In this document: in pieces, positions 2,043-9,780 of the stretch | How the letters are laid out: each line of letters begins with the position of its first letter | How positions within the stretch are numbered: the stretch's first letter is position 1 | Origin: Saccostrea echinata | Taxonomy: Eukaryota | Reading direction: 5' to 3' | Assembly (NCBI RefSeq): GCF_033153115.1 | Contig: NW_026889790.1 | Location: 434,001-498,000, forward strand | Length of the DNA: 64,000 nucleotides | Program-made: the position numbers and the translations under genes | Notes under the pieces: model-generated | Told to the model about the DNA's origin: nothing | Database searches by the model: none | The model's input: only the letters and a program-made list of their open reading frames with translations

Positions 2043-2176
2043 ATGTGCAAGAAACGAAAAGGCAAAAATTTTCTGTATCTTTTATTAATTATGCTTACTT
2101 TTAGCTTCTGTAACTGTGGATGGACAGAAGATGGAGGGTATATTGGACTCTATCCTGGCGGGTGCACCGTAAAAAG
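2043..2176 (+). CDS. Small secreted cysteine-rich protein, exon 1 (signal peptide)
   Basis: MCKKRKGKNFLYLLLIMLTFSFCNCGWTEDGGYIGLYPGGCTVK: basic n-region, hydrophobic h-region, small-residue cleavage site; AG|GTATCT donor, phase 2. Confidence 0.75.
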
Positions 2177-6848: not shown

Positions 6849-7360
6849 TTACTTTGTTCTTGCTCTCTCCATTAACAATTAATTCAACAATTAATTTCTA
6901 CTTTTTATTAATATTTAGAAATCTTCCACATGTATACCCATTGTTACAAGCCACAGCCCAAAGTGTAGGATCCTCTCCCATTCTGGAGAGAGTTATAGCT
7001 TGAGATGATGTTTACTCTCTTCCATTCAGTTTCTCTTCCATTCCAAATTCACATTGAAGGTATGTGGTTTCAGTTTCCCTTCTAGCTTCTTTTCTCTTCT
7101 TTGTAATACAAAACCATGTTACTGGTATGCTTGTCTGAGCAAGAACATGTTAACTCACTATGGCCTACATATATTAGCTTGTGCCATTTTCTGTTTCCTT
7201 AGTTCTTTATTCTTATGGAAAATTCAAAGTAAGAATTTTATTGAGTTAATCAATAATTATTCCACCAATACTTGTGTTCTTACACCATTTTATAATTTGT
7301 GGGATTGTTAAGTTTTCAGTTTAAATTCTTGATATGATCAGTATGTTCTATTTGTTTTAG

Positions 7361-9780
7361 TGACTGGGTGAATTCAAAAAAAATGACCACCAAACTGAAT
7401 TTTTTTGGCAAAATTCAACTACTTATAACATATTTTTCACTTATATCATCATATTGCAAATGCATTCTAGTTTAAAATCCTGAAGTGGCAATAGAATAGA
7501 CAATTGGATTAAAAAGTTTCAGAATTTTTATTAGTAAAATTTCTTTTGAAAAAAGAAAATATCATTACACCTTAAAAGACTTTCTAAAATACATAATCTC
7601 AAGAAATTATAGTTTTTTATGCTTCAAAATGGTAAAACGGGTATAAATGATTAAATCTAGACCTTGAATGAGTATCTTCTCTTGTACATGTGACAAAAAA
7701 TTGGCTTTTTGATTGTTATTTTACATTATTTTTTCAATTCTGGTTTGAAAAGTTTTCATATGAAAAAAATATGAAGCAATAAAATTCCCCAAAATTCACT
7801 TTTTTGTCCGTTCAAGTCAATTCTTTAAATCTAAGCCAAAAAAGAATTGATATATACGAGTTCTCTTACAAAAAATACTAGATTTTGAAGTCACCCTATG
7901 TTACATTATTGTGTTGCACTCCTGACATCTGATATGTATTTAATTTAACATTGTTTTAAAAATTATAACACACAATAGCCCATTCTTACTTTGTAAATCA
8001 ATTTGTCGTGTTGATATTTTTCATCGTTTACAGCAGGTTTTTCATATTTTGAAGACCTTAAAACGATTATTTGCAAAGTGTAATATATATAAATTGTATT
8101 TAAAATATATGTGATATGATGAAAACTATTCCCTGAATTGACTGTAAAATTTCTGTAATTTGTTGATAGACATAGTGTTTTGAACATCAAATAGTATCAA
8201 GCATTTTTTTCAACTTATTTTTTAGAAAACATAGTTAAAAAGCATCGGTAATTATGAAGCAGTTTTGTTGCACTCCTGACTGCAGTAAAGTTTAAAATTA
8301 AAACCATAGAACACAAAAATTCATAAAGTGTTGGCAACATCAAGTGGTAATGAAATTGTGCAATACTTATAGTCCAATACTTCATAATTAAAACAGATGA
8401 AAGTATTTAAAATTCGCATTTTATCTGGAATTATACCCTATTTTATGCCAAAAAAACTAGCTTAAATGTATATTTAGAAGATAAAATATATTTTAAAGCA
8501 TATTTTCCTTTAGAAGACAAACACAGTAACCCACCAGAAAAATTCTACTCATGATTTTTTCCTTATTTTTATTCTTATTGGATGATTTATAATTCTAACA
8601 TATTTGTTGCACTCCTGACCAAAAGCATTGGGGCCTTTAAAGTAGAATTGTGAAGTGAAAATTACATAAGAACTTGTTCTGTTGTTTCAGTGAAGTTGAG
8701 GAGGAATTACTTGAATTTTATGACAATCTTTTAGTGTGTTTATTTTTAACGTTCATTAAAAAAATCACAAAAAAGATAAAAACACATCTGAATTGATATA
8801 ATTGAAAAAGGAAGGATTTTGATCATAAAACTGTCAATAATATAGCATTAAATTATACAAAAAGATCATTATTAATTAATGAATACTTCTAAGCATGAAT
8901 AGAAGTCTTTTCGTCACAGAACTTGAATCTTTAAAAAAATGTGTTGCACTCCTGACCATAGAAATATGGATCTGAAGCACAGACAGATCCTGTAATTGAT
9001 AAATCTATTTGGTAAAAATGTTCTTTGTGGCTTTATTTCCCAAAATAAAAATCAGAAAATCATATAATGATAATAGTTTTTTCATGCTTGGAAGCAAAAC
9101 ATCAAATGTTGCACTCCTGACATTTTTGGGTATGCACATATACTTGACTCTCATTAATGCTGCTTGTGATTTATATAACATTTTAAAGTTTTAAAATGTA
9201 TATCAGTTATTATTTTACACTTCCAAAATTCTTTTTTGTCTTAATTTTCTATCAGAATTTTACAATCGATGTTTTTTTGGCAACACTACATTTTTTCTGT
9301 TGCACTCCTGACATGGTATAACATTTTTTTAAACATCAGCCATGACCACAACTTGATTAAACAAAAGTTTCAACAGTCCACATTTAAAGCTCAATACTTT
9401 GAATATTATCAGGAAAGTCTTTATTTTCAACATGAAGCATTATTTTTTATTTCACAGATCTCCAAAAAATATTGAAATTTCAAAATGTCACAAAAAGGTG
9501 TTGCACTCCTGACAATTTTAGCATCATTTTTGGGCATAACTTTTTTGTTAATTGAGATATCAACGAGATATTTGGCAGGTATTTAGACACTATCTAAAGA
9601 CATATGCTGAGACATAGAAATCTATTTTCATTGCCTGTATTTTTAGTGTGGGTTGATAAATATGCGTTTGGTCATTTTTTTTGAATTCACCTGACTGCCC
9701 AATGGATGAGAGATGCATGCATTCAGTAGAGGAGACAGTTTGTCCTAGTGATCATCAAAATTTATGCAGGTGTACTTTAG
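7361..9780 (+). CDS. Cys-rich protein exon 2 (7361-7366 plus 9698-9780), interrupted by a 2325-bp transposon
   Basis: Acceptor tttgttttag at 7360. Removing the element and one TGACTG copy gives an 89-nt phase 2-to-1 exon, SDCPMDERCMHSVEETVCPSDHQNLCRCTLG, with donor G|GTTTGT at 9781. Confidence 0.75.
7367..9691. mobile_element. 2325-bp non-autonomous TIR DNA transposon, 6-bp TSD, with seven internal 15-bp direct repeats
   Basis: Perfect 23-bp TIR GGTGAATTCAAAAAAAATGACCA; TSD TGACTG at 7361-7366 and 9692-9697; no long ORF inside. Confidence 0.92.

What the first reader, a model, noticed from the sequence alone, without database searches (positions are those of the whole stretch)
7912..9513. 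Seven perfect, co-oriented 15-bp repeats with unique long spacers inside the transposon
Seen: TGTTGCACTCCTGAC occurs without mismatch at 7912, 8266, 8605, 8942, 9107, 9298 and 9499, all on one strand. Periods are 354, 339, 337, 165, 191 and 201 bp, and the intervening AT-rich sequence shows no obvious mutual similarity. Periods are roughly one or two times 165-200 bp, the nucleosome repeat scale. Perfect motif conservation with unrelated spacers is not what ordinary tandem duplication leaves. Known transposase-binding subterminal repeats are usually clustered and inverted at both ends. Inference: a selected array of protein-binding or recombination sites (iteron-like or cassette-like) in an unclassified DNA transposon with GG termini and a 6-bp TSD. 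This is the best candidate here for an undescribed system.
Basis: partly seen in the sequence, partly recalled or inferred. Interest (0 to 1): 0.8.

Follow-up and report, generated by a model that had tools for sequence, protein, structure and literature searches.

The report
Transposon with seven conserved docking boxes
A young, gene-less, high-copy cut-and-paste transposon of a bivalve-like animal carries seven identical 15-base boxes that vary as little as its terminal repeats and recur in a distant relative, so they are probably protein docking sites the element needs in order to move.

Summary
In detail: TGTTGCACTCCTGAC occurs seven times, exactly, on one strand, at the stated coordinates, and the spacers are not alike. 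The setting needs correcting. [quoted passage not shown] Its target-site duplication (TSD) is 4 bp and AT-rich (consensus ATAT), not 6 bp.

It has no ORF. It belongs to a family with 4,355 exact boxes in the 923-Mb genome, and the best copies are 96-98% identical. Spacer order is the same in every copy checked, so it is not cassette-like, and the spacers are not decayed satellite monomers.

Three results support function:
- Among 31 young copies, box positions vary 0.25%, spacers 1.65% and TIRs 0.36%.
- Every box mutation seen is private to one copy.
- A 2.6-kb contig from another animal holds the right end of a related element. It has a similar TIR, the same 194-bp distance from last box to end, and five exact boxes in otherwise unalignable DNA. 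Two of those boxes are 24 bp apart and one is inverted.

The boxes are therefore selected recognition sites. Their spacing and common orientation are not conserved. No autonomous partner or binding protein was found. The scan had already noted this family on another copy (s1-803112) with the same reading.

The parts
7362..7365 (.). Left target-site duplication (GACT)
   Evidence: 24 of 25 family copies have a perfect 4-bp TSD directly outside GGGTG...CACCC; sequence read.
7366..9692 (+). Whole non-autonomous TIR transposon (2,327 bp, 27% G+C, no ORF longer than 75 aa inside)
   Evidence: Genome copies match at 96-98% from query position 21-27 to 2351-2359 of window 7340-9720, which is about window 7360-7366 to 9690-9698. 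Other evidence: ORF list, no Rfam match, consensus of 23-31 copies.
7366..7389 (+). Left terminal inverted repeat GGGTGAATTCAAAAAAAATGACCA
   Evidence: Inverted repeat I2, 100% complementary. 406 exact matches in the genome. Nearly invariant among 31 copies apart from a C/A polymorphism at position 10.
7912..7926 (+). Box 1 TGTTGCACTCCTGAC
   Evidence: 1 mismatch among 31 copies
8266..8280 (+). Box 2
   Evidence: 1 mismatch among 31 copies
8605..8619 (+). Box 3
   Evidence: 1 mismatch among 31 copies
8942..8956 (+). Box 4
   Evidence: 3 mismatches among 31 copies, each private to one copy
9107..9121 (+). Box 5, followed by ATTTTTGGGTATG, which also follows the last box of the relative L049
9298..9312 (+). 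Box 6
   Evidence: 2 mismatches among 31 copies
9499..9532 (+). Box 7 plus 19 further invariant bases (the longest stretch with no variation in the element)
   Evidence: A 34-nt run with zero variation among 31 copies. The last box lies 194 bp from the end both here and in L049.
9669..9692 (-). Right terminal inverted repeat; the last base here is T where the family has C
9693..9696 (.). Right target-site duplication (GACT)

Best explanation
The 1.6-kb array belongs to the consensus of a young, very abundant, non-autonomous cut-and-paste DNA transposon (24-bp TIRs, 4-bp ATAT-like TSD, possibly Sola2-type). Shown: the seven 15-bp boxes are under purifying selection in the lineage of elements that keeps transposing. 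Inferred: each box is a docking site for a sequence-specific DNA-binding protein, either the unknown transposase or an accessory protein of the autonomous partner. On this reading the protein recognises the boxes separately from the TIRs, and several occupied sites are needed in cis for efficient excision or integration. This would resemble the TnpA motifs of En/Spm or the THAP sites of P/Galileo. Copies that lose a box stay in place but leave no descendants. In the protein-coding relative the boxes lie between the right TIR and the 5' end of an inward-facing gene, so they may also regulate that element's promoter. What matters is the identity and number of sites, not exact spacing or orientation.
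For: Family and youth: there are 4,355 exact boxes in the genome and none for the reversed control. There are more than 2,000 first-look candidates, with the best copies 96-98% identical over the full length. TSDs are perfect. Selection: in 31 young copies the mismatch rate is 0.25% in boxes (8/3,255), 1.65% in spacers and 0.36% in TIRs once their one polymorphic site is left out. Seven random 15-nt windows give a mean of 54 mismatches and a minimum of 19 in 20,000 draws, against 8 for the boxes. The 15-nt windows on either side of a box give 44 and 41. Correcting for base composition, 41 substitutions are expected and 4 are seen, P = 2e-13. No box variant is shared between copies, where 6 shared variants are expected, and all box mutations found are private. 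In older copies (78-85% identical to the consensus) boxes are 86% identical against 74-85% for the flanks; 29 of 5,000 random window sets do as well. Independent relative: L049 (VAPA010661193.1) is animal DNA whose flank reads, by eye, as a succinyl-CoA ligase alpha exon. Its TIR matches ours at 21 of 24 positions and its right arm has the same 194-bp length at 69% identity. It holds five exact boxes and no near-boxes, and the rest is unalignable. The boxes do not resemble the TIR, which fits a second recognition module.
Against: No binding protein and no autonomous partner were identified. Every long TIR pair or odd junction examined was a nested insertion or a truncation. The L049 OTU-type exon has no homologue in this genome. 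The array is one-sided and co-oriented, unlike classical subterminal sites. Three of four randomly chosen single-copy variants are private to this assembly, yet private variants are still about 3-fold depleted in boxes (8 against 26.6 expected). A pure 'filter at transposition' model explains this only if variants that are private in this assembly are shared elsewhere in the population. In old copies of this genome the excess conservation of the boxes is modest.
Confidence: 0.55

Rival explanations
1. The boxes are sites for a host sequence-specific factor, such as a germline transcription factor or an architectural or insulator protein. The element may exploit this factor for open chromatin, tethering or targeting, or the host may have co-opted the sites. 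Either way the family has seeded more than 4,000 identical sites. The gypsy Su(Hw) array and CENP-B boxes would be analogues.
For: Private variants are depleted in boxes although most sampled singletons are private to this genome. All box spacings are at least 165 bp (P about 0.008 for random placement). In the relative, the boxes lie upstream of a gene.
Against: Old copies lose boxes freely; several retain only one exact box. Spacing and orientation are not conserved in the relative. The TIRs, which matter only for mobility, show the same degree of invariance. No expression or chromatin data could be obtained.
Confidence: 0.2
2. The motif acts at the RNA level: a processing, splicing or small-RNA signal repeated along a transcript of the element.
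For: The box contains CTGAC, a consensus branch-point sequence (own knowledge). All seven boxes are on one strand. Contigs of runs guessed to be RNA cover the element.
Against: No joints coincide systematically with boxes. There is no consistent polypyrimidine/AG after the boxes and no sequence complementary to the box anywhere in the element. There is no Rfam match. One box is inverted in the relative. The run types are only guesses.
Confidence: 0.07
3. The array is the remnant of an internal tandem repeat or satellite of about 170 bp, as in bivalve MITE-borne satellites, in which only a core has survived.
For: Periods are roughly 1x and 2x 165-200 bp. Bivalve MITEs that carry satellites are known (own knowledge).
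Against: Spacers show no mutual similarity. There are no degenerate boxes in the middle of the long units. TRF finds nothing. In the relative, box spacings are 24, 166 and 394 bp with unrelated spacers.
Confidence: 0.03
4. The boxes are recombination sites bounding exchangeable cassettes, as in an integron.
For: The architecture alone: identical, co-oriented short sites separated by unique spacers of variable length.
Against: Order, number and identity of spacers are fixed in all young copies and in the divergent copies (about 80% identical). Variant copies are explained by point mutations or nested transposons that have their own TSDs. No recombinase was found.
Confidence: 0.03

Closest known systems
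En/Spm (CACTA) subterminal 12-bp TnpA-binding motifs (own knowledge)
   Same: Many copies of one short motif lie inside the element, are unlike the TIR, and are bound by an accessory protein. They are needed in cis for transposition and overlap the element's promoter region.
   Different: En/Spm motifs are degenerate, occur in both orientations, and are packed within about 200-300 bp of both ends. Here the boxes are exact 15-mers on one strand, 165-357 bp apart over 1.6 kb, and skewed to one end. Binding has not been tested.
THAP-domain sites of P element and Galileo (PMC3688188, listed)
   Same: Multiple internal transposase-binding sites distinct from the extreme termini.
   Different: Those sites lie within long TIRs or subterminal regions at both ends. 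The superfamily differs (7-8 bp TSD, own knowledge).
Sola2 non-autonomous DNA transposons
   Same: 4-bp AT-rich TSD of AWWT type (ATAT, AAAT, ATTT) as reported for Sola2 (PMC3627910). Short TIRs. Sola elements are present in bivalves (PMC10294476).
   Different: No Sola2 transposase was found linked to these TIRs. I know of no reported internal box array for Sola2. Repbase and Dfam could not be consulted.
Ginger1/Ginger2 DNA transposons (PMC2836005)
   Same: 4-bp TSD. Ginger1 transposases carry an OTU protease domain, and the relative L049 encodes an OTU-like protein.
   Different: Ginger termini follow TGTNR, and Ginger1 targets CCGG/CCGT. Here the termini are GGGTG and the TSD is ATAT-like. 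The OTU gene in L049 appears to stand alone.
Bivalve MITEs with internal satellite repeats (pearl-type, Helentron-borne satellites; own knowledge)
   Same: A non-autonomous element of a bivalve-like genome with a repeated internal feature at about 165-200 bp periods.
   Different: Those monomers align with each other; these spacers do not.
gypsy Su(Hw) insulator array / CENP-B boxes (own knowledge)
   Same: An array of identical sites for one DNA-binding protein, carried on repetitive DNA and spread through the genome.
   Different: Those sites serve host chromatin functions. Here the evidence points to selection for mobility, because the TIRs are equally constrained and old copies decay.

Membership tests
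Non-autonomous TIR (cut-and-paste) DNA transposon | Terminal inverted repeats | tested here: met
   The 23-nt arms called by the repeat finder pair perfectly, within a 24-bp TIR that matches the genome exactly 406 times and is shared by all copies.
Non-autonomous TIR (cut-and-paste) DNA transposon | Target-site duplication of fixed length at independent insertions | tested here: met
   Perfect 4-bp TSD in 24 of 25 copies with unrelated flanks.
Non-autonomous TIR (cut-and-paste) DNA transposon | Multi-copy, with no transposase ORF | tested here: met
   More than 2,000 candidates. The longest ORF lying inside the element is 75 aa.
Sola2 | 4-bp AT-rich (AWWT) TSD | tested here: met
   ATAT x5, AAAT x3, ATTT x2 and others; the position-wise consensus is A-T-A-T. 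Criterion taken from PMC3627910.
Sola2 | Mobilised by a Sola2 DDD transposase carried by an element with the same termini | tested here: inconclusive
   No autonomous copy was found among the TIR pairs listed. Only the first 100 places of each search are shown. No Sola2 protein query was available.
Ginger1/Ginger2 | TGTNR termini; CCGG/CCGT (Ginger1) or RTATAY (Ginger2) target | tested here: not met
   Termini are GGGTG. Criteria from PMC2836005.
MITE carrying an internal satellite | Internal units that align with one another | tested here: not met
   TRF finds nothing. Spacer-to-spacer alignments score at chance level.
Cassette array (integron- or CRISPR-like) | Spacer content differs between copies, bounded by the repeats | tested here: not met
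   Same spacers in the same order in every copy examined.
Transposase or accessory-protein binding-site array | Sites more conserved than surrounding DNA within the family and between related families | tested here: met
   within the family; relative L049
Transposase or accessory-protein binding-site array | Demonstrated protein binding and a cis requirement for transposition | not testable with these tools
   Needs binding and transposition assays.

The most novel reading that the evidence does not exclude
The boxes are kept intact in resident copies after insertion, not only filtered at each transposition. That would mean hundreds of transposon-borne arrays, more than 4,000 identical 15-bp sites, serve a host-level or chromatin-level function. 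One example would be docking an architectural protein, as CENP-B boxes do. The opening for this reading is that variants private to this genome are still about 3-fold depleted in boxes.
Probability: 0.12. Interest if true: 0.85.

Novelty: new variant of a known kind. Interest (0 to 1): 0.5.

Why it matters
Cis requirements of eukaryotic DNA transposons beyond the TIRs are known for only a few model elements, and to my knowledge for none with this TSD type. Here comparison alone picks out a sharply bounded 15-bp motif that is as constrained as the TIRs and survives in a relative where all else has diverged. That gives an exact bait for finding the binding protein and the missing autonomous partner. 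It also gives a clean set of mutations for testing how internal sites contribute to transposition. The family places more than 4,000 identical sites in a bivalve-like genome and is still inserting into genes; this copy interrupts a coding exon.

Tried and rejected
1. Decayed satellite: rejected.
2. Cassette shuffling: rejected.
3. ORF or RNA gene in the array: none found.
4. DNA-encoded nucleosome positioning: no 10-bp WW periodicity, and spacing is not conserved in L049.
5. Splice or branch-point signals: no consistent downstream AG or polypyrimidine tract, and no joints at the boxes.
6. The 7.3-kb coding insert in copy L036 as the autonomous form: rejected. It has its own TIRs and a TTAA TSD.
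7. Other long or odd copies (L031, L032, L044, L045/46, L047, L048): all are nested insertions, replacements or truncations.
8. A 30-nt loose end seen in two organisms led to one old truncated copy, not to a partner.
9. The OTU exon and the TIR variant of L049 were searched in this genome: no exon homologue, and the single TIR hit is a variant of our own family, not the L049 type.
10. Literature search for the 15-mer: no hit.
11. Scans of genome contigs and viral contigs: no hit.
12. L050 from the metagenome scan is an unrelated 59-bp tandem repeat.

Full report
**Observation**

TGTTGCACTCCTGAC occurs exactly seven times in the 64-kb window. All seven are on the + strand, at 7912, 8266, 8605, 8942, 9107, 9298 and 9499. 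There are no extra matches at up to two mismatches, and 0.16 matches are expected by chance. The periods are 354, 339, 337, 165, 191 and 201 bp.

Tandem Repeats Finder sees no array. When the seven sites are aligned on the motif, conservation stops exactly at the 15-mer edges. The long spacers hold no degenerate box at up to five mismatches on either strand. Local alignment of the eight inter-box segments against each other scores at chance level (mean z 0.6). The single exception is the pair of terminal inverted repeats.

**The element**

The array lies in a 2,327-bp element at window 7366-9692. Its 24-bp TIRs read GGGTGAATTCAAAAAAAATGACCA. The element has no ORF above 75 aa, no Rfam match and 27% G+C.

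Twenty-five genomic copies with unrelated flanks show GGGTG...CACCC termini. Twenty-four of them have a perfect 4-bp TSD, with consensus A-T-A-T (ATAT x5, AAAT x3, ATTT x2 and others).

A 4-bp AWWT-type TSD is what has been reported for Sola2 elements (PMC3627910). Ginger elements also make 4-bp TSDs, but they have TGTNR termini and different targets (PMC2836005), so that membership fails. Without a transposase the superfamily remains open.

**The family**

- The genome (923 Mb, 425 contigs) holds 4,355 exact boxes and none of the reversed control.
- A DNA search gives more than 2,000 first-look candidates. The best 38 full-length copies are 96-98% identical.
- The 24-nt TIR matches exactly 406 times.
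- An 84-mer around box 5 matches 312 times at up to three mismatches.
- All 30 fetched copies have the same spacers in the same order, with box spacings of 354-358, 337-339, 337, 165, 191 and 201 where all seven boxes are exact.

Copies with odd spacings are point mutations in a box, older decayed copies, or nested insertions of other transposons with their own TSDs. Nothing suggests exchange of cassettes.

Contigs from public runs show near-identical copies (about 98-99%) in a second organism and only weak, partial matches in a third. No joints fall systematically at the boxes.

**Are the boxes selected?**

In an alignment of 31 young copies, the mismatch rates to the consensus are:

| Region | Mismatch rate |
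|---|---|
| Spacers | 1.65% |
| Boxes | 0.25% (8 of 3,255 cells) |
| TIRs, leaving out one C/A polymorphic site per TIR | 0.36% |

Seven random 15-nt windows, one per spacer, carry 54 +/- 14 mismatches, with a minimum of 19 in 20,000 draws. The boxes carry 8. The 15-nt windows directly beside the boxes carry 44 and 41, so the boundary is sharp. With base-specific rates and with CpG sites and homopolymers excluded, 41 substitutions are expected in the boxes of 23 copies and 4 are seen (P = 2e-13).

No box variant is shared by two copies, where about 6 shared variants are expected. All box mutations found in any copy are different from each other. The boxes are thus as constrained as the one feature known to be needed for mobility, the TIRs, and box mutants do not seem to found sub-lineages.

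In seven older copies (78-85% identical to the consensus) the boxes do decay. Several of those copies keep only one exact box. The boxes remain more conserved than their surroundings, at 86% against 74-85% (29 of 5,000 random window sets do as well). In aligned columns only, the figures are 92.4% against 85%. In a multiple alignment, the whole right third of the element is well conserved and the boxes there are not outliers. Within this genome's old copies, then, the signal is real but modest.

**Where does selection act?**

Sub-lineage structure exists. For example, the window's A variant 15 bp upstream of box 5 is shared by at least 22 copies. I took four randomly chosen variants that were singletons in my sample. 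Three are unique in the assembly and one occurs in four copies. Singleton variants are nevertheless about 3-fold depleted in the boxes, with 8 seen and 26.6 expected.

The simplest account is a continuously active family with high turnover in a polymorphic population. Under this account, most copies in one haploid genome are recent insertions, and their 'private' changes arose in still-mobile ancestors. This inference is untested. It leaves room for a constraint acting after insertion, and I give that as the novel case.

**An independent relative**

One metagenome scan for two boxes 145-175 bp apart returned two contigs. One of them, L050, is an unrelated 59-bp tandem repeat.

The other, L049 (VAPA010661193.1, 2,630 bp), is animal DNA. 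Its right flank reads, by eye, as an exon of succinyl-CoA ligase alpha followed by an intron start. This flank finds no DNA match in the present genome.

- L049 ends in ...GTCATTTTTTTTGAAACCACCC, which matches our TIR at 21 of 24 positions.
- Its last box starts 194 bp from that end, exactly as here.
- The two right arms align at 69% identity.
- The rest of L049 cannot be aligned with our element.
- Even so, it contains five exact boxes and no near-boxes: 1745, 1769, 1935 and 2329 on the plus strand and 1411 on the minus strand.
- Left of the boxes, on the minus strand, lie exons of an OTU-like cysteine protease (Pfam OTU, E = 0.016 on a 64-aa exon, with a DGNCYFWAL motif).

The boxes therefore sit between the right TIR and the 5' end of an inward-facing gene. 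This relative shows three things. The 15-mer itself is the conserved unit, at least as conserved as the TIR. Protein-coding members of the wider group carry it too. The co-orientation and the spacing of at least 165 bp seen here (P about 0.008 for random placement) are not conserved properties. I saw no 10-bp WW periodicity.

**Mechanism**

Shown:
- A sharply bounded 15-bp motif is kept by purifying selection in the transposing lineage.
- It is as constrained as the TIRs.
- It is unrelated in sequence to the TIR.
- It is present in several copies in two distant relatives.

Inferred:
- Each box docks a sequence-specific DNA-binding protein of the autonomous partner, either the transposase through a second DNA-binding domain or an accessory protein.
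- Several occupied sites are needed in cis for transposition, and possibly for control of the partner's promoter.

The closest working analogues are the 12-bp TnpA motifs of En/Spm and the THAP sites of P/Galileo (own knowledge; PMC3688188 is listed). The differences here are the exactness of the motif, the wide spacing over 1.6 kb, the single orientation and the one-sided position.

Rival readings are host-factor sites, RNA-level signals, a satellite remnant and recombination cassettes. They are weighed in the rival explanations above; the last two are contradicted by the data.

**What was not achieved**

No autonomous partner was found in this genome. Pattern searches list only the first 100 places each. 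All long TIR pairs or odd junctions I could examine were nested insertions or truncations (L036, L044, L045/46, L047, L048). The OTU exon of L049 has no homologue here, and a search with its TIR variant returned only a variant of our own family.

Repbase and Dfam are not available here. The 15-mer does not occur in the searchable literature.

**Relation to earlier notes**

The scan had already described this family from another copy (s1-803112) and reached the same reading, docking sites. My tests agree on selection of the boxes. They do not support that note's 'evenly spaced' or 'distances conserved' wording as a functional property.

**Verdict**

This is a real, selected cis-element array in an ordinary kind of mobile element. 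It is a new variant of a known kind and of moderate interest. It now comes with a precise bait sequence and clear experiments.

Noticed in passing
window 2154-2176 joined to 9692 onward; insertion at 7366-9692: The transposon sits a few bases inside a coding exon, directly after the acceptor ttttag at 7355-7360. Contigs of two runs (organism A and organism C) join the upstream exon ending at 2176 directly to TGACTGCCC at 9692. This is a spliced transcript of an uninterrupted allele, so the insertion is probably recent or polymorphic.
   Followed up: partly
L036 2878-10169 (G000:C1:2300877-2308168): A 7.3-kb transposon is nested at a TTAA inside another copy of the family. Its termini are GG...CC with about 20-bp imperfect TIRs. 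It carries a spliced gene with a Mutator-like transposase domain (PF20700, E = 1.5e-38), and further ORFs on the same strand encode an RNase_T-type exonuclease and a PML C-terminal domain (PF25244, E = 2.6e-26). A PML_C/exonuclease module on a bivalve-type transposon may bear on the origin of that vertebrate domain.
   Followed up: partly
L049 353-1069, minus strand (VAPA010661193.1): The related element in another animal encodes a stand-alone OTU-like cysteine protease and is inserted in an intron of a succinyl-CoA ligase alpha gene. A second contig in the same data carries a near-identical exon (P0002).
   Followed up: partly
window 7375 and 9683 (position 10 of each TIR): Both TIRs carry the same C/A polymorphism (GAATTC or GAATTA) at about 50% frequency. 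All four left/right combinations occur among copies. Either the site is tolerated, or the ends recombine or convert.
   Followed up: no
L044, L045/L046, L048, L031: Copies of this family often host nested insertions: 1.5 kb with a 6-bp overlap, about 15 kb with a 10-bp overlap, 7.7 kb, and about 0.95 kb with a 7-bp overlap.
   Followed up: partly
L047 280-793 (G000:C54:43525979-43526492): An old truncated copy (85% identical, left arm only) has a junction found once in this genome. The same 30 letters are present in contigs of organisms A and B, which suggests an orthologous old insertion shared by two close species.
   Followed up: partly
L050 1148-1811 (SL_7KL_010_BRINEDRAFT_10047606): A brine metagenome contig has a G+C-rich 59-bp tandem repeat whose units resemble the box (TGCTGCACTCCTGAC and variants). 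It has no other similarity and I take it as coincidence.
   Followed up: no
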